Below, piece by piece: positions 38,459 to 47,615 of a stretch of DNA of 64,000 nucleotides. The notes beneath the pieces were generated by a model, which made no database searches, was not told where the DNA came from, and saw only the letters and a list, made by a program, of their open reading frames with translations. Origin of the DNA: Vitrella brassicaformis CCMP3155. Its lineage: Eukaryota; Protista; Chromerida. The number at the start of each line of letters is the position of its first letter. The stretch's first letter is position 1. The stretch lies in the NCBI GenBank assembly GCA_001179505.1, contig CDMY01000305.1, positions 372,001 through 436,000 of the forward strand, given 5' to 3'. Both the position numbers and the translations under genes were made by a program.

Positions 38459-40140
38459 CTAGACAACGTTCGGCCCCAGCAGCAGCGACCCGACGGCAAA
38501 GACGAGGAACAGAGTGCCGGCCGCCAGGGCGACGGCACGCTCGCTGATCGAAGCCGCCAGCATCTTTCCTCCGACCACAGCGATGCCCGTGCAGATGGCG
38601 TGGCCCAGACAGCCGCCCACCGTCACACCCACAGTCTCCTCCAACTTGGCACTGAAGCACACACACACACACAGACACAGACAGAAAGAGACAGACACAG
38701 AGGCCCATGTGTGCATGGAGGGTTGGGGGAGGGGAGAAAGGCTGAACTGCCTCTCACACGTGTCGTGTGAGTGTGGGGCATGGCATGCTTACGCGAGGGC
38801 TATGGTGGTGATCTGCGACCTATCCCCCCACTCGGCGCAGAAGGTCATCATGAACGCCTGCAAAGCACAGAATGGACAAACGGTATCTCTCTCCCTCCAT
38901 CCATACGCTTGCCACCACACCTGACCTGCCAGAATGTCTTGTTGACGATCCACGAGAGCCCCCACCTCTCCACCCAGGTCCCCCTCACGCGCCGCCGCAG
39001 CCGGCCAGGCACACCGCCCACACCTCCAAGACGCGAACTCGCCGTGGACGTGTGACGGACAAAATCCAACGGAGGAGACGGCACATAGCCGTACGTGGCA
39101 CCCTGACCCTGACCAGCACCGTCAGTGTCTGTGTCAGTGTCAGTGTGTGCCGGCTCCTGCTGCTGCACAAGGGGCGTGTTGAGATCGGGTGGTGGTGCTG
39201 CTGCTGTGGGGGGGAGCTGATTGCTGTGGTCATGCTGGGAGGTGGAGGTGGAGGTGGGCGGGGAGGCGTGTGAGCTGCCCTCGTCCGCGATGGAGCTGAA
39301 GGGCCGGTCGAGAGCGTCAGAAGACTCCGCCGCCGTGCTCTGCTGCTGCGACCGCTGTGACTGCTGCGACCGCATGTGAAGGTGGTGGTTGCTGTTGCTG
39401 TTGCCGACGCTGCTGCCGACGTGCTTGTCCTCCCCTCCCCCGCCCTCATCCTCATTGCTGTCCGGCAGAGCCGTCTCTGAAAATGGCGATGGCACAGCCG
39501 TGGATGGCAGGGAGGGGTCGTACTTGGCGCGTGCCGTGTGTGTGGGGTGGCTGTGGCTGTGGCTGTGGTTGTGGGTTTGTGCGTGGGGCTCAGAGGGCTC
39601 TGGCCCTGACGGTTCGGAGGGCAGCAGCCGGAAGCCCTGGGGGAAGGAGGTGATGGGCATGGTCATGTCGTTGCTGTGATTGTTATTGCTAATGAGGTGG
39701 TGGTCGGATAGGGGGGTGGCGTCCTCTGAGGCTGCGTCGAGGTTCATCTCCTGTTCGAGCTCGCGGATCTCCTCCTCCGGCTCCTCTGCACATATCACAA
39801 CACACACGACCATCACATCAGTATGCCCGTGGAGTGGAAGATGTGTTGAGCTGCCAGTCCCCCCCCCTTCTCCTCTCTCTCTGTGTGTGTGTGTATGTGT
39901 GTGTGTGTGGTTGGTGACCACACTGACCAAAGGTGTTCATGCAGGCGTCGTAAAAAGACTTGACGGCGAAGACGAAGAAGAGGACAATGGCGGCATAGTG
40001 CGTCCATATCTTAGGCAGTAGTGTCGGCAGCAGCTTCCCCAGCAGCGCCGACAGCAACGTCATCAGCGCCAGACACGCAAATGCCGCCCAGAACACGACT
40101 GCATCACATGTGTGTGGCGGTGATAGGGGGGAGGGAACGA

Positions 40141-40172
<32 letters not shown>

Positions 40173-40761
40173 GCGTTGATGAGGCGTGTGTGTGTGTGTG
40201 TCTTCCTTACTGATGTGTGATCCCCTCATCGAAAGAATGGCAGCGATGAAGAAGGTCTTGTCGCCGATCTCCTGCATCCGACGCCAGCCACACCTTTGAT
40301 TCCCTCCCTGTGACAGCCCTGTGTGGCCCGATTGCCCGACTGACTGACCGAGAAGATGATGTTTAAGAGGCTTGCAGCAAATGCCGTCCAGAAGCCCGCA
40401 TGCGACTGCTGCCCCTCCCCCGCCGAGGACGCCATGCCCTCAAACACGCCCTGGATCTGATTCCACGCGGAGTCGACAAGGGAAGGATGCAGCCCCGCTG
40501 CCGGCGTCGACGCATTGCCGTCATCATGATGAAGGCCCTGCGCGACACGCGCCACGTCACACGCACACACGCGTGTGCCAGATCAGTGCATTGCATGTGA
40601 TTTGCTGTGTGTAAGTGTTTGTGTGCCTGGCGGACCTTCAGGCCTCGGAGGAGCAGCGCCGCATCGGATGCCAGATCTGCCGCATCCTGCGCATCCCCAC
40701 TGGGGGCGGCGATAAAGATGAACACAAACGAAAGAAACACAGAGAGGCGAGATATAAGCAT
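38459..40761 (-). CDS. GDT1/TMEM165 (UPF0016) Ca2+/Mn2+ transporter with enlarged central loop
   Basis: Both family motifs present: EIGDKTFFIAAIL and FCAEWGDRSQITTIAL. Terminal GVTVGGCLGHAICTGIAVVGGKMLA. N-terminal signal-like sequence. Confidence 0.92.
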
Positions 40762-40965
40762 GGCAGCCGCCACCGGTTCTGCCTCAAAGCCCTCGGCACT
40801 GGGGAACGCTCGAAACCCCTCGAGCTCGCACAAAGGCTCGCATTTCCCTGATCGATGCGTTTCTCCCCTTGAGGTTTCTCTGGCCCTCTGTAGCGTGTGA
40901 AGGCCACAAGCATGCCCACCATCCATCCCGCTCTCGCCCAAACGACTGACTAGACAGACAGACAC

Positions 40966-43900
40966 ATGGCATCGCTCGGCACCACAACAGAGGCTGCAGC
41001 TGCAGCCGCAGCAGCTGGGGGAGAGCCTGCAGCACAGCCTGCAGCAGCAGCTGCAGCAGCGGCTGCCGCTGCACCATCGCAGGCACCTCCTCCCGGGTTC
41101 GGCGCGGCGGGCCTCGTTCGTGAGGATGAGTGGCGGTGCGACGGTTGCAGGACCCCGAACAAAGAGACGGATCTCAAGTGTGTGGCATGCGACGACGTCA
41201 AGCCGGGGCTGGACCAGGAGGAGGTTGATGCCGCCGTCCGCAAGCAGCAGGAGGACCTCAAACGACGCTTCCTCGGCTTAGGCAGCGGCGCTGGTGGAGG
41301 TGGAGGTGGGGGAGAGGGGGGTCTCCCCGCTCGGCCGCCGGGAGCAGTCTTCCACCCTGCCCCTGTGGTAGGTCAGCAGCCGTCTGTTCAAGTGCCGCCT
41401 CCCACAGGCGCGGCGCTCTTCGGGTGGCGGCCTCCAACCGCCGCTGCCGCCGGCGGTGGTGGTGGTGGGGGTGGTATTGCGTTGTTCGGCCGTGGTGCTG
41501 GGGAGGCAGAGTTCCGCCTGAGGTCCAACGAGAAGACGCCCAGGTACGGGAGGGAAGCCACAACACGACCCCCACCGATTCGTAGCGTGTGTGCATATCT
41601 CTTCCCTCCCTCGGTGTCTGTCTGATGCATTTGTCTGTGCAGTTTCGGTCCACCAGAGGAGCCCGCAGCAGCAGCAGCAGCTGCCGCGGCCGCGGCCCCT
41701 CCCCCCCAAGTAGAGAGCAACGATGCCGCCAACCCTCCCCTCTTTGTGTTTGGCGCTAACCAGAACCAGCCGCCTCCGCCCCCCTCCCTCGACCCAATGC
41801 CCGGCGAGCTCTTCGCAGATCAGCTCCAGCAGCAGCCTGCCGCTGCAGCAGCACCAGCAGGGTGGGTGCCGGTGTTGGCCCCCGCCCCGGGCGCCCCTGT
41901 TGTTGGTCTGAAGAGCGGTTTGCGTGTGCCTGATTTGAGCGTGGGGGTGTTGGATTTGGGTGTTGAGGAGCAGCGGATTGTCAATGGGGTAGCGGTGCCG
42001 CTGGGAGAAGTATTCTCGCATGGATCTGGTATGTATGGGGGGATTGGGATGCAACTGAGCGCACACACGAATGGATGGATGGATGGACGGATGGATGGAT
42101 GGATCTCTGTGTTGGTGGTGTGTGTGTCGTGTGTTGCAGGTGAGTGTGATCAGCTGGGTTTGGGGGACACTAAGCTGCAGAGGAAGAAACCTGACCTAAT
42201 CAAAGTACGTTTCAGCCACACCACACCCATACCACACAAACACACGTGTGTTGATATCTGATGCTTGTATTGGCCTCTGTGTGCGTGTGTGTGTGTGTGT
42301 GTGTTTAGGAGTTGGAGGGCGAGGAGGTGTGGGAGATAGCAGTGGGCGGCATGCACTCAGCAGCGCTCACCAAGAACGGAAAAGTCTGGACCTGGGGTGA
42401 GCTGAGCTGTCACACAGACATCCACGCCCTCGCACACCGCCCCAGGCACACACGCATGACATGACATGTGTGTGTGTGTGTGTGTGTGTCCATTGGTTTG
42501 TTCAGGGTGCAACGACGACTACGCACTCGGCCGTGACGGAGTGCAAAACCGACCCGGTGTGCTCGAGCTGGACATCACTATCAAGATCAAGAAGGTAACC
42601 CCACACACGCACCACACCACACCACACCACACCAGCACAGCCATCCCTCCCTCCCTCCCTCTGTCCCTCTGTTCCTCTGTCCCTCTGTTGATCGTCCCAT
42701 CACCCGACCAGGTGGTGTGCGGCGACAGCCACAGCGCCGGCCTCTCCTTCACCAGACACGTCTACCTATGGGGCTCCTACAAGGTAGGTGCCTACCACAC
42801 CCACCCCACACAGACTCACAAACGCCCCCGCATCCCTCTCTCCTCTCTCCTCTCTCCCTGTGTGTGTCCTGTTGTCATGTGTCGTGTGTCAGTGCAACGA
42901 CTTCCACATCGGGTTCCCCCATCGGGAGGTCAAGGTCACGGGCCTCCCTGAGGGCGCGTCGGCCACCAGGGTGCGGCAGTTCTTCGAGAGCAAGCTGCCG
43001 GACGTCGCAGTGCAGGAGGTCCGCCTCGACAGAGACAGTGGGTACGCTCGTCGGCACCATGCCCTGCACACACAACACAGGGAGAGACAGAGAGAGAGGC
43101 TCTGTTTTGCGTGTTGTTGTGAGTGATGTGTTTGTGTTCAGGAGTGCGCGTGTGTCCTTTGTGGACGAAAGCGCTGTGGAGAAGGCCGCCGGCCTCGACA
43201 ACGAAGTCGTCACGGAGGACACATTCCTCGACTCCACCACACAAGAGGACCAAAAGGTGACCATCCCCCCCGCCCCACCCACACCGACACCGACTCACAC
43301 ATCTGCCTTCCCATCTCTCTCTGTCTCTCTCTGTGTGCGTGTGTGTGGGGAAGGAGTGTCGCATCCGCGTGTCGTCATGTCTGTGTGAGAAGCAGCGCGT
43401 GCCCGTGAGAGTTCCCCATCTCGACAACATCCAGCAGCTCGCAGCCGGCAACAACCACACCATCGCCCTCCGGGGCGACTCAGAGGTGAGTGACCCTCTA
43501 TCTGCCCATCCACCCACCTCGCACCCTCCCCTCCCCCCCGTCTCTCTCTCTCTCTCTCTCTGTGTGTCTCTTTGAGTATGCAGTTGTATGTGTGGGGCAA
43601 CAACGAGTTTTCTCAGCTGACCTTCCCCCCTCTCCGGCCCGCAGACGACGAGGAGGCCCGCAGTGACGGATTCCAGAAGCGCAAGCGCACCGCAGCGCGG
43701 GAGCTCCTGTACCCCAAGAAGCGCACACTCGCCGAGTAAGAGAGAGAGAGACGCGGGGGAGAGAGAGATGGATAGATGTCATTTGTCTGTGTGTCTGTCT
43801 GTCTGTCTGTGTGTCTGTCTGTGTGTGCAGGCTGGGCATTGGTGCGTCGTGTGGGTCGATCAGCCGAGTCTTCGCCTCGGCCAACTGCACCTTCCTCGGT

Positions 43901-44341
43901 GTCAGGACCACCAACGGCGTATCGAAGCTCTACGGGTAAGTCACAACACAGACACACACACAGTGGACACACACACACATACGGCTCATGTGCGTGTGTG
44001 TGTGTGTGTTGGTGCGCTGTGAGTTCAGGTGTGGTTCGAACTCATGTGGTGAGGTGGGCATCGGGACGCAGAGCGAGACGGTCGACGAGATGACCGAGGT
44101 AGCAGCGCTCCGCGATAAGGACGTAAGCACCGCCTCTCTCCATCCATCCATCCATCCATCCATGGGTGTGCTGTCTCTCTCTCTCCTGTGTGCAGGTGGT
44201 TCAGCTGTGCGGCGGCAGTTTCCACACCGTCGCCCTCCTGCGCGACCGCCTCGACGCCAGCGACGGCACCGTCATGTCGTGGGGCAAGGGTGCGTACTCA
44301 CACATGGACGCGCGCATGCATACTCATGCAATCCCATCTCC

Positions 44342-44377
<36 letters not shown>

Positions 44378-44919
44378 CCAGGTGAGTGCACTGGCACCGG
44401 TCGCTCGGGTCAGGACAATGTGCTAGAGCCTCGGGAGATCTCTGTAGAGGTACGTTTGTTTCGTTTAGTGGCTGACGAAGAGAGGGAGGGAGGGAGAAAC
44501 ACGGACACGGACAGGCAATCACGCCCTCCCTCTCCCTCCCTCTCTGTGTGCGCGCGACCATTCATTCACACCACACAGGGAGTTCGTTTCCGCACTATCG
44601 GCGCTGGAGCCACACACACGCTCGCGACCACCCGCGCGGGCGATGTCTTCTCATGGTGCGCACTCACATGGACACACACCCATCCCCTTCATCGGTGCCT
44701 TATCTGTGTGTGTCTCTTCTGTGTGTCTGGTGGTGTCATGTCATGTCAGGGGTGTTGGCGTGAACCATCAGCTTGGGAACTTGACGCAGGAGCCGACGGA
44801 CGACGCGGCCTACGTAGAGTTGAAGCCCCATCGCATCGAGTCCATGAAACTAGCGGACAAATTCGTCCTGAAGGTAGGTACCACCACACAACACACACCC
44901 ACACACAAACGTGCAAACG

Positions 44920-44968
<49 letters not shown>

Positions 44969-47615
44969 TGGCTCCATTACCCATCCATCAGGCCGACGGC
45001 GGTGCGCAACACTCTGTCGAGTTGGTAAGACACACACTGCACAAACACAACAGCACTTGCCCCTCATCTGATTCCACTTGTCTCTCTGTCTGTCTGTCTG
45101 TGTGCTCCACCCCGCCCCCACCACATACGGCACACAGGCGTGGACCGGCAAGACCGACTTCCTCCGCGGCGAAGCGCCAGAGGCGGTGGTGGCCCCTGCA
45201 GCGGCAGCGGCAGCAGCAGCTGCTGCAGCTGCACCTGTCGTGCCGCCGTCTCCCCCTCCCGCAGTGTCACTCCAGCTCAAACGCAAGCGCGAGGAGGAGG
45301 ACAAGTCGCCGTCGCCCAAGAAGCCCCGGTTCGGCCACCTGACGGCAGCTGCTGCCGAGATGGAGGAGGAGATGGACATGGCCCCCGCACCACAGCCCCT
45401 GCCCCCTCCAGCCATACCCGAGCAGCAGGAGCAGCAGCAGCAACAGCCCCCCGCACCATCCGATGTCGACATGGCCGAGGCCGAGGCAGAGGAGCCGCAG
45501 TTGCCGCCCTTCGCACCGATGACGGCTCCGCCTGCCGTGGGTGTTCACGAGGCTGCTGCGGCTGCTGCTGTTGCCCCGCCAGGGGGCGACGAGGAGATGG
45601 CCGCACCTTCGCCACAACCACCGCCCCCCGCTGCTCAAGATGAAGACGAGGACCAAGAGATGGCGCCTGCGGCCCCTCCAGAGGAGGAGCACCCACTACC
45701 CCCACGGGCCCCTCCTGGCCCTCCTCCTGTTCCTGAGCCATCCCAGGAGGCTCCGGAGGCTCCCCAAGCACCGCCAGCCGCCGAGGAGGCCGAGCAGGAG
45801 GCTGCTGGGGCGGGAGAGGAGGGGGCTGAGGGCGGCGGGGAGCAGCTCGAGCAGCCTGCTGGGGGCGTTGAGGGTGCGGAGGGCGGAGAGGAGGAGGCTC
45901 CAGCTCCCGCGGTGCCCAAGGCCAAAGGAAAGGCCAAGGGGCGCGCCAAGGGCAAGGCCAAGGCGGGGCGCGCTAAAGCCAAGCGCGCCCCGCGCAAGAC
46001 CAGGGCTGCTGCAGCTGACGACGATCACGAGGAGGAACAGGAAGAGGGGCAGGCTGCAGCAGCGGCAGCAGCAGCAGCAGCTGGTGGTGGGATGGGGGAG
46101 GCCGCTGGTGCGGCAGTTGGAGAGGGGGATGTAGAAATGGCCGAAGGAGTTGGAGGAGAGGGCGAGGGCGCTGCGGGCGAGGGCGAGGGTGCGGCAGCTG
46201 CCGTGGCTGGCGAGCAGCAGCCTGAGGAGCCACAGGAAGAACACGAGGACGAGGAGGAAGAAAAAGACAAACCAGAGGAGACGGAAGAGGAGGCTCCCGC
46301 CCCAGCCGCAGCAGCGGCCGCTGCTGCTGGTGGTCGCCCTCGCCGTAAAGCCGCGCAGAAGCCCTCAGGTCAGAAACAACTTACACACATGAACGCATCC
46401 ACCCACTCGTTGAATGACACCCCCCGTATGTCCGTCTGTGTGTGTCTGTGTGGATTGTTCAGCTGCTGCTGGTGTTGGTGAAGGGGAGGAGGAGGAGGAG
46501 GCAGCCGGCGGGCGTCGCGTCAAGAAGCCCGTCGGCAAGACCAAGGCCAAGAGCAAGGCGGCGAGCAAGGCTAAGGCGAAGGCCAAGAGCGGCAGTAGTG
46601 CTGCGGTGGCCGCGCGGCCGAAGCGGACGGGGGCGAGGAGGCAGCCGCCACCTGACGAGGAGGCAGAGGACGAGCGCGAGCATGACGAACAAGCAGAGAA
46701 CGAGGAGGCGCCGCCCGCCCCGCCTGCGCGTCCGCAGAGGCCCCGCAGACAGGCCGCACAGAAGCAGCAGAAAGGTGCGCCGAAAGAGAGGAGAGGCAGC
46801 GTGTGGGTGGTCTTGTTCTGTGTTCCATGGATGGACTCTTTGTGCTGTGCTGTGCTGTGTTGCAGACGTAGCCGAGGAGGAGAAGGAGGAGGAGAAGGAG
46901 GAGGGCGAGGCCGAGCCAGTGGCGGCGGCTGCTGCTGCTGCGGCCGCCAAGCCCCCACCAGCACCGAAGAGGGCCGCCAGAGCGAAACCGAAACCCAAAG
47001 CACAGACAGAAGGTCAGTCAGTGAAAGAGTGCGACATCCGCCCAACCACTCATTGATTCTCTCTGGTTGCATCTGCTCAGCCAAGGCCAAGCCGAGGCCT
47101 CGTAGGGCTGCCGCGGCCGCTGCACACCACGACCAACACGAAGAGGAGGATGAAGACGAGGACGAGGGCAAGGAGGAGGGTGGAGAGGAGGAGGTCGCGC
47201 AGCCTGCCGCTGCTGCTAAGGCCAAGGCCAAAGCTAAGGGCAAGAGTGCGGCTGCCAAGAAGGCCGCTGCCAAGGCCAAGGCCAATGGGAAAGCACCAAA
47301 GCCTGCAGAGGAGGAGGAGGTACGCGAGAGGGAGAGAGATGTAGCTCACCCACATCAACCGGTCGGTGGAGGGACGGTCGTCATTTGTGTGTGTGTGTGT
47401 GTGTGTGTGTCAGGAGGATGAGGGTGAGGACGAGCCCGTGGCGGCCCAGCCCAAGGCTAAGGCGAAGGCGAAGGCCAAAGGTGCGTGGGGATGAACAGAC
47501 ATGGGACCATTCATTGGGTCGATGGATGGACAGATGGAGGGATGTGTGGGTGTCATTCATGTCAGGCAAGGCGAAGGGCAAAGCGAAGGCCAAGGCTAAG
47601 GCCAAGGCCAAGTGA
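40966..47615 (+). CDS. RCC1: RCC1 (Ran guanine nucleotide exchange factor) orthologue with N-terminal RanBP2-type zinc finger, internal RRM and acidic/Lys-Ala C-terminal tail
   Basis: Blades GEVFSHGSGECDQLGLGD..RKKP, VGGMHSAAL..VWTWGCNDDYALGR, CGDSHSAGL..VYLWGSYK, AAGNNHT, CGGSFHT, GDVFSWGVGVNHQLG, DGGAQHS match RCC1 proper. ZnF WRCDGCRTPNKETDLKCVAC at 41131-41190. TGA at 47613-47615. Confidence 0.88.

What the first reader, a model, noticed from the sequence alone, without database searches (positions are those of the whole stretch)
42923..43380. RRM domain inserted inside the RCC1 propeller right after the Ran-contacting beta-wedge
Seen across three in-frame exons: WGSYKCNDFHIGFPH-[REVKVTGLPEGASATRVRQFFESKLPDVAVQEVRLDRDSGSARVSFVDESAVEKAAGLDN..ECRIRVS]-CLCEKQRVPVRV..AAGNNH. 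The bracket has RRM topology with RNP aromatics mostly replaced. Established: in human RCC1 the equivalent GSFRDNNGVIG segment is the beta-wedge and runs directly into KSMVPVQV. Inference: an RNA- or protein-sensing module placed beside the exchange surface could couple RanGTP production to RNA or RNP cargo. I know of no described RCC1 with this insertion.
Basis: partly seen in the sequence, partly recalled or inferred. Interest (0 to 1): 0.8.

Follow-up and report, generated by a model that had tools for sequence, protein, structure and literature searches.

The report
RRM-like domain inside Vitrella RCC1
The RCC1-type gene of the alga Vitrella brassicaformis really does carry about 85 extra residues, whose first 56 resemble a PARP14-type RRM domain, spliced into the propeller loop right after the Ran-contacting wedge; this layout appears undescribed, but nothing yet shows that it senses RNA.

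Summary
A 23-exon GT-AG model on the + strand (40966-47615) gives 1488 residues. That is exactly the start, stop and product length of the public Vitrella brassicaformis CCMP3155 annotation. Skipping the two insert exons would give 1400.

Exon 6 aligns to human RCC1 126-147, so the wedge (146-153) reads YKCNDFHI. The extra segment starts four residues after it. About 100 residues fill a loop that spans 13 positions in Pfam's RCC1-like-domain profile.

The first 56 insert residues match PARP14-type RRM repeats:
- E 1.2e-4 against 1.84 billion proteins, using exon 7 alone.
- hhalign 95.6%, E 1.2e-8 once exons 7 and 8 are joined locally.
- The match runs across the splice junction.
- The last ~30 residues match nothing.

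The RNA-stacking aromatics are absent and the insert is acidic (pI 4.6). I therefore favour a protein-docking or regulatory module beside the Ran face over an RNA sensor.

Not done:
- A fold of the joined protein: it has no reference.
- An ortholog survey.

Earlier notes of this scan report other RRM-like insertions in this genome, none in RCC1. This is a new variant of a known kind, of moderate interest.

The parts
40966..47615 (+). Whole gene: 23 exons, 1488 aa. It encodes a RanBP2-type zinc finger plus FG-like N-terminus, a seven-blade RCC1 propeller carrying the insert, and a long acidic/KAKAK tail.
   Evidence: Model with GT-AG introns. Same range and product length as the public annotation. 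Pfam hits on single exons.
42712..42783 (+). Exon 6 (aa 403-426, VVCGDSHSAGLSFTRHVYLWGSYK): blade-3 strands and the first two wedge residues. D407 corresponds to human D128 and K426 to human R147.
   Evidence: Aligns to human RCC1 126-147 (5tbk_I) and fly RCC1 134-155. Pfam RCC1_2 E 5e-4; WD40_RLD profile positions 95-114.
42893..42922 (+). Head of exon 7 (aa 427-436, CNDFHIGFPH): the rest of the wedge (to I432, human I153) plus four linker residues.
   Evidence: Numbering carried on. The likeness to human DNNGVIGLLE rests on my recollection of the human sequence.
42923..43041 (+). Rest of exon 7 (aa 437-476): the β1-α1-β2 part of the RRM-like module (REVKVTGLPEGASATRVRQFFESKLPDVAVQEVRLDRDSG).
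   Evidence: Pfam RRM_PARP14_3 E 0.092. hnRNP H quasi-RRM E 0.036. P0002 E 1.2e-4. hhalign 90.8%, E 1.2e-6.
43042..43141 (+). Intron 7 (100 nt, GTACGC...CAG), phase 2, inside the RRM-like module.
   Evidence: Similarity to PARP14-type repeats continues in frame across it.
43142..43256 (+). Exon 8 (aa 476-514): β3 (SARVSFVD), the start of α2, then an acidic stretch (NEVVTEDTFLDSTTQEDQK) of unassigned structure.
   Evidence: hhalign places residues 2-12 on template columns 48-58, directly after the end of exon 7 at column 44. Adding it raises the hhalign score from 34.1 to 47.5. No PDB or Pfam hit on its own.
43257..43353 (+). Intron 8 (97 nt, GTGACC...AAG), phase 0.
43354..43380 (+). Head of exon 9 (aa 515-523, ECRIRVSSC): end of the insert. 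It is either β4 of the module or a return strand; undecided.
   Evidence: No similarity detected; assigned by position only.
43381..43485 (+). Rest of exon 9 (LCEKQRVPVRVPHLDNIQQLAAGNNHTIALRGDSE): outer strand of blade 3 and the first strands of blade 4.
   Evidence: Pfam RCC1 E 3e-5; WD40_RLD profile positions 128-160. PDB RCC1 and UVR8 hits.

Best explanation
This is the RCC1-type (Ran exchange factor-like) gene of Vitrella brassicaformis. Its blade-3 loop, four residues after the β-wedge that in human RCC1 reaches the Ran P-loop, has taken up a domain of about 85 residues, encoded by the end of exon 7, exon 8 and the start of exon 9. The first 56 residues are homologous to PARP14-type RRM modules (β1-α1-β2-β3-α2). 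In an RRM, β1 and β4 are neighbouring antiparallel strands, so the two ends of the fold lie close together. Such a domain can therefore sit in a loop without disturbing the propeller. It lacks the RNA-stacking aromatics and is acidic. I therefore think it most likely acts as a protein-docking or regulatory surface at the rim of the Ran-binding face: an extra contact with Ran, or a site for a partner that tunes or localises exchange. I think a canonical RNA reader less likely. Shown here: the exons, their frame, agreement with the public gene model in length, the RRM-type similarity, and the position relative to the wedge. Inferred: the complete fold, the location on the Ran face, and any function.
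For: The gene model equals the public annotation in start, stop and length (1488 aa). That annotation came from Augustus with strand-specific RNA-seq intron hints (PMC4501334). Coding scores and GC3 of exons 7 and 8 match the other exons. The RRM-type similarity is supported. It continues across the exon 7/8 junction, and the hhalign score rises from 34.1 to 47.5 when exon 8 is added. For position, exon 6 aligns to human RCC1 126-147. Pfam's RCC1-like-domain profile leaves 13 positions (115-127) between the matched parts of exons 6 and 9, where Vitrella has 103 residues. The wedge protrudes from blade 3 on the Ran-binding face (PMC7522611), and R147 contacts the Ran P-loop (PMC2898669). Against canonical RNA binding: Lys, Ser and Arg stand at the RNP aromatic positions (read from the sequence), and the insert has pI 4.6.
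Against: No structure was predicted, because the joined protein has no reference. The last ~30 residues of the insert match nothing, so a complete RRM fold is not shown. Pfam's RRM_PARP14_3 score for exon 7 alone (13.3 bits) is below the curated cut-off of 24. Non-canonical RRMs such as the hnRNP H/F quasi-RRMs do bind RNA through loops, so missing aromatics do not exclude RNA binding. Whether this protein is the Ran exchange factor of Vitrella is not shown. By my recollection of the human sequence, the residue at the D182 position is Asn.
Confidence: 0.5

Rival explanations
1. RNA or RNP sensor: the inserted RRM binds RNA, and through its position beside the wedge it couples RNA or RNP presence to RanGTP production.
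For: The module is of RRM type. It also resembles the hnRNP H quasi-RRM, a class that binds RNA without the RNP aromatics. It lies within ten residues of the residue equivalent to the P-loop-contacting R147.
Against: The RNP1 and RNP2 aromatics are replaced. The insert has net negative charge and pI 4.6. The nearest relatives are PARP14-type modules rather than classical RNA-binding RRMs. No binding data exist.
Confidence: 0.17
2. Neutral decoration: a lineage-specific domain insertion tolerated in a surface loop, with no effect on Ran exchange. It would be one of many RRM-like modules that spread through Vitrella genes.
For: Earlier notes of this scan list several RRM-like insertions and fusions in this genome (unchecked). 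The C-terminal third of the insert is acidic, low in complexity and unmatched. No relative of exon 7 was found elsewhere.
Against: The reading frame, codon usage and RRM core are maintained. The site is one of the most constrained surfaces of RCC1, where an inert 85-residue domain would be hard to tolerate.
Confidence: 0.18
3. Cassette or mis-annotation: exons 7 and 8 (264 nt, in frame) are skipped in most mRNAs, and the main protein is a 1400-residue RCC1 without the module.
For: 149 + 115 = 264 nt, so skipping keeps the frame. No read evidence was obtained here. The acceptor of exon 9 (GGGGAAG|) is weak.
Against: Skipping would also remove the second half of the wedge (CNDFHI). The public RNA-seq-hinted model has the length that includes both exons. 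Both exons show coding signal and a preserved RRM core.
Confidence: 0.08
4. Not a Ran exchange factor: the propeller is an RCC1-like domain serving another partner, or is a poor exchanger, and the module occupies or replaces the former Ran site.
For: The D182 position appears to be Asn and R147 is Lys (for K426; recollection of the human sequence for N). D182A strongly lowers kcat in human RCC1 (PMC2898669). The genome holds many RCC1-like fusions.
Against: A wedge-like WGSYKCNDFHIG follows the RCC1 pattern at the right blade, and D128 is kept. The RanBP2-type finger, FG-like motifs and NLS-like, lysine-rich stretches fit a nuclear Ran-system protein. Lys/Asn could still form the Arg/Asp-type contact.
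Confidence: 0.2

Closest known systems
Human RCC1 / yeast Prp20(Srm1) / Drosophila BJ1 (Ran guanine-nucleotide exchange factor)
   Same: Seven RCC1 repeats in the same order. The GDSH motif with D128 is kept. The wedge follows the WGS(F/Y)(R/K) pattern at blade 3.
   Different: About 85 extra residues directly after the wedge. An N-terminal RanBP2-type finger plus FG-like region replaces the short basic tail. There is a ~680-residue acidic/KAKAK C-terminal tail. R147 is Lys, and D182 is probably Asn.
PARP14-type RRM modules (Pfam PF23085 / PF23222)
   Same: The best sequence match, covering β1 to the start of α2, with the shared pattern V-K-V-T-x-L-P-x-G-x-S...FFE...V..V..D.....A.V.F.D.
   Different: It lacks the KKSGGG loop of those repeats. 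Its C-terminal third is unmatched. It occurs once, inside a propeller loop, not in tandem at a protein's N-terminus. It is below Pfam's cut-off when tested as exon 7 alone.
hnRNP H/F quasi-RRMs
   Same: VKV(R/T)GLP...S...V..FF start, and no canonical RNP aromatics.
   Different: Only a weak match of 21-29 residues (E 0.036 to 0.8). Quasi-RRMs bind G-tracts through loops whose residues I could not compare.
Toxoplasma gondii TgRCC1 (divergent apicomplexan Ran exchange factor)
   Same: It is described as highly divergent yet active as a Ran exchange factor (PMC5785795), and it belongs to the sister lineage of the chromerids.
   Different: I could not fetch its sequence with these tools, so whether it has an insert at this site is unknown.

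Membership tests
RCC1 (Ran exchange factor propeller) | Seven tandem RCC1 repeats forming one propeller | tested here: met
   Pfam RCC1, RCC1_2 or WD40_RLD hits on exons 4, 6, 9, 13 and 15. Repeat motifs (G-x-N-x-x-G-x-L-G, G-G-x-H-T) are visible in all seven units of the model. The fold itself was not predicted.
RCC1 (Ran exchange factor propeller) | β-wedge in blade 3 (human 146-153) | tested here: inconclusive
   Exon 6 aligns to human 126-147, ending in WGSYK against WGSFR. The continuation CNDFHIG against DNNGVIG rests on my recollection of the human sequence. No structure was predicted.
RCC1 (Ran exchange factor propeller) | Residues needed for exchange (D128, R147, D182) | tested here: inconclusive
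   D128 is kept and R147 is Lys. D182 appears to be Asn in AAGNNH, by an alignment from memory. The roles of R147 and D182 are taken from PMC2898669.
RCC1 (Ran exchange factor propeller) | Nucleotide exchange on Ran | not testable with these tools
   Needs a biochemical assay.
RRM clan, PARP14-type RRM (PF23085) | Score above Pfam's curated cut-off | tested here: not met
   Exon 7 alone scores 13.3 bits, E 0.092, against a cut-off of 24. The joined insert could not be given to the Pfam tool.
RRM clan, PARP14-type RRM (PF23085) | Significant similarity to accepted members | tested here: met
   P0002 carries 7 RRM_PARP14_3 hits (E 9e-107). Exon 7 matches it at E 1.2e-4, library-wide. The local HMM gives 24.3 bits versus 12.4 for the best of 5000 shuffles. 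hhalign gives 95.6%, E 1.2e-8.
RRM clan, PARP14-type RRM (PF23085) | β1α1β2β3α2β4 fold | not tested
   The joined sequence has no reference, so the fold step was left out. β4 is unassigned: it could be EVVTEDTFL or ECRIRVS.
Canonical RNA-binding RRM (RRM_1) | Aromatic residues at RNP2 position 2 and RNP1 positions 3 and 5 | tested here: not met
   β1 reads V-K-V-T-G-L, with Lys at position 2. β3 reads S-G-S-A-R-V-S-F, with Ser and Arg at positions 3 and 5. This is read from the sequence as aligned.

The most novel reading that the evidence does not exclude
A ligand-gated Ran exchange factor. The RRM-like module, tethered by 4- and ~7-residue linkers next to the wedge, binds RNA, an RNP or another nuclear ligand and thereby switches access of Ran to the wedge. 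RanGTP production on chromatin would then be tied to the local RNA or cargo state in chromerids, and possibly in apicomplexans if they share the insert.
Probability: 0.1. Interest if true: 0.85.

Novelty: new variant of a known kind. Interest (0 to 1): 0.45.

Why it matters
[quoted passage not shown] A folded domain inserted there would be a natural experiment in how exchange can be regulated or targeted, particularly in a protein that also carries a RanBP2-type finger, FG-like motifs and a long charged tail. It comes from the closest free-living relatives of apicomplexan parasites, whose Ran system is described as atypical (PMC5785795). If the insert is shared with them, it would bear on parasite nuclear transport. 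If it is confined to Vitrella, it is mainly one more example of the domain shuffling this scan has noted in that genome.

Tried and rejected
2. Exon 7 against 1.84 billion representatives. There was no self hit and no ortholog. P0001 is a translated tandem repeat. P0003 and P0004 are bacterial surface proteins. I rejected all three as chance matches from summed short stretches.
3. Metagenome scan with exon 7: nothing.
4. PDB searches with exons 5, 8 and 10 gave nothing useful for anchoring.
5. hhalign of exon 9 against the RRM repeats, and a forced global alignment of the insert tail: no signal.
6. I could not fetch the annotated 1488-aa product. No stop-free reference in the gene is long enough for the word search's length rule. 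The record shows no Pfam hits for that product, and the representative library did not return it. I considered padding an alignment with a long unrelated protein to widen the length range, and rejected that as unlikely to work and not a proper query.
7. Literature searches for an RCC1 with an RRM and for TgRCC1 architecture described no such insert.

Full report
**What is there**

The window is GC-rich eukaryotic DNA with many short exons and TG/CA-rich introns. Reading the + strand from 40966, I built a 23-exon model in which every intron is GT-AG and 68-129 nt long. The neighbouring gene's product (P0005) is 100% identical to a GDT1-family protein of Vitrella brassicaformis CCMP3155. The contig that carries it, CDMY01000305.1, matches window 28459-50761 without a mismatch. 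On that record a gene is annotated at exactly 40966-47615 with a product of 1488 residues.

My model gives 1488 residues as well. Leaving out the two exons in question (149 + 115 = 264 nt, which keeps the frame) would give 1400. The public models were made with Augustus using strand-specific RNA-seq intron hints (PMC4501334).

**Corrections to the coordinates**

- Exon 7 is 42893-43041. Its Gly codon is split GG|G.
- Exon 8 is 43142-43256.
- Exon 9 is 43354-43485.

**Are exons 7 and 8 coding?**

I trained a codon table on the other propeller exons, with the gene's introns as background. Exon 7 scores +0.75 and exon 8 +0.40 bits per codon in the model frame. Both are negative in the other two frames, and the flanking introns are negative in all frames. 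GC3 is 0.90 and 0.74, like the neighbouring exons.

**Where the insert sits**

Exon 6 (VVCGDSHSAGLSFTRHVYLWGSYK) aligns to human RCC1 residues 126-147 in the full-length chain 5tbk_I, and to the matching residues of the fly protein. This gives the following equivalences:

| Vitrella | Human RCC1 |
|---|---|
| D407 | D128 |
| K426 | R147 |
| YKCNDFHI (425-432) | wedge, 146-153 |

GFPH follows the wedge, and the extra segment starts at R437.

In Pfam's RCC1-like-domain profile, exon 6 ends at position 114 and the matched part of exon 9 begins at position 128. Thirteen profile positions therefore correspond to 103 residues in Vitrella. The wedge protrudes from blade 3 on the Ran-binding side (PMC7522611). 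R147 contacts the Ran P-loop, held in place by D182 (PMC2898669).

**What the insert is**

- Exon 7 alone gives Pfam RRM_PARP14_3 at E 0.092, below the cut-off.
- It gives hnRNP H quasi-RRM chains at E 0.036 in the PDB.
- It gives language-model neighbours named PARP14-type RRM, NID and RRM_1 at scores of about 0.8, which are leads only.
- Against 1.84 billion representative proteins, the only meaningful hit is P0002 at E 1.2e-4. P0002 carries seven RRM_PARP14_3 matches (E 9e-107), KH domains and a macro domain.

I joined the exons only inside scripts. The joined insert aligns to each P0002 repeat, and the alignment runs through the exon 7/8 junction...RLDRDSG|SARVSFVDESAV against ...KYDEDTNSAIIWFEDADVV. 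An HMM of the seven repeats scores the model at 24.3 bits, against 12.4 for the best of 5000 shuffles.

Tested by reference, exon 7 matches template columns 3-44 (hhalign 90.8%, E 1.2e-6). Exon 8 matches columns 48-58, exactly where it should continue (E 0.063). Joined, the score rises from 34.1 to 47.5 (95.6%, E 1.2e-8, 56 columns). That the similarity continues across the junction is itself evidence for the splice.

The remaining ~30 residues (AAGLDNEVVTEDTFLDSTTQEDQKECRIRVS) match nothing. The last strand of the presumed fold is therefore not assigned, and a complete RRM fold is inferred, not shown.

**Would it bind RNA?**

In the aligned register, β1 is V-K-V-T-G-L and β3 is S-G-S-A-R-V-S-F. 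The three aromatic positions that stack on bases in classical RRMs are Lys, Ser and Arg. The 85-residue insert has 12 K+R against 18 D+E, pI 4.6, and no Tyr or Trp. Quasi-RRMs show that RNA binding without those aromatics is possible, so RNA binding is not excluded. It is not the first expectation, however.

**How it most likely works**

In an RRM, β1 and β4 are neighbouring antiparallel strands, so the chain enters and leaves at nearly the same point. This is established topology, and it suits a domain inserted into a loop. With linkers of four residues (GFPH) and about seven residues (SCLCEKQ), the module must sit right beside the wedge at the outer edge of blade 3.

My estimates are:
- About 45%: a docking or regulatory surface for Ran itself or for a partner.
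- About 17%: an RNA or RNP reader.
- About 18%: a neutral passenger.

Separately, there is about a 20% chance that this propeller is not an efficient Ran exchanger at all. R147 is Lys, and D182 appears to be Asn; the latter depends on my recollection of the human sequence. There is about an 8% chance that the exons are mostly skipped.

**Novelty**

No paper in the held library describes an RCC1 with an RRM. No relative of exon 7 turned up in the representative library or in the metagenome scan. This absence is weak, for three reasons:
- The protein's own annotated product was not returned either, and it has no Pfam hits on record. That points to a gap in the collection.
- An ortholog as distant as Chromera's would probably fall under the cut-off for a 49-residue query.
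- I could not fetch any alveolate RCC1.

Earlier notes of this scan report several other RRM-like insertions and fusions in this genome (unchecked). That makes the event less singular, though none of them is in RCC1.

**Limits**

- The joined protein was used only in local scripts. It was not folded and was not sent to Pfam, PDB or the homology searches.

**Verdict**

This is a new variant of a known kind, of moderate interest.

Noticed in passing
window 40966-42028 (exons 1-2): The N-terminus carries a RanBP2-type zinc finger, WRCDGCRTPNKETDLKCVAC (Pfam PF00641 E 4.2e-6, 26.4 bits against a cut-off of 27). It also has FG-like motifs (LFGW, ALFGRG, SFGPP, FVFGANQNQ) between poly-Ala and Gly runs. 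This is a nucleoporin-like head on an RCC1, already listed by the scan as s1-201926.
   Followed up: partly
window 45138-47615 (exons 18-23): A tail of about 680 residues alternates acidic blocks with KAKAK/poly-Ala and RPRR(K/Q)AAQK stretches, and ends in GKAKGKAKAKAKAKAK.
   Followed up: no
window 43584-43735 (exon 10): A blade-4 loop holds the basic stretch FQKRKRTAARELLYPKKRTLAE, which looks like a bipartite nuclear localisation signal. It has no Pfam or PDB match.
   Followed up: no
window 42893-43256 (exons 7 and 8): Together the two exons are 264 nt, so skipping both would keep the frame and give a 1400-residue protein without the module and without half of the wedge. A possible cassette; untested.
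   Followed up: no
window 42775-42783 and 43435-43452: The human R147/D182 pair, which positions the contact to the Ran P-loop, appears as Lys (K426) and Asn (in AAGNNH). The Lys follows; the Asn rests on my recollection of the human sequence.
   Followed up: partly
L001 3147-9796 (= window 40966-47615): The annotated 1488-aa product has no Pfam family on record, although single exons hit RCC1 and zf-RanBP. It was also not returned by the representative search with its own exon. The neighbouring products are in the collection. This is probably a database gap.
   Followed up: partly
window 38600-40900, minus strand: A GDT1/TMEM165-family gene (P0005, 554 aa) lies directly upstream, head to head with the RCC1 gene.
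   Followed up: yes
window about 53.2-53.6 kb and 57.3-57.6 kb: Runs of N (assembly gaps) interrupt open reading frames.
   Followed up: no
window 42649-42688 (intron 5): A CT-rich simple sequence tripped the reads tool's filter. It was not searched further.
   Followed up: no
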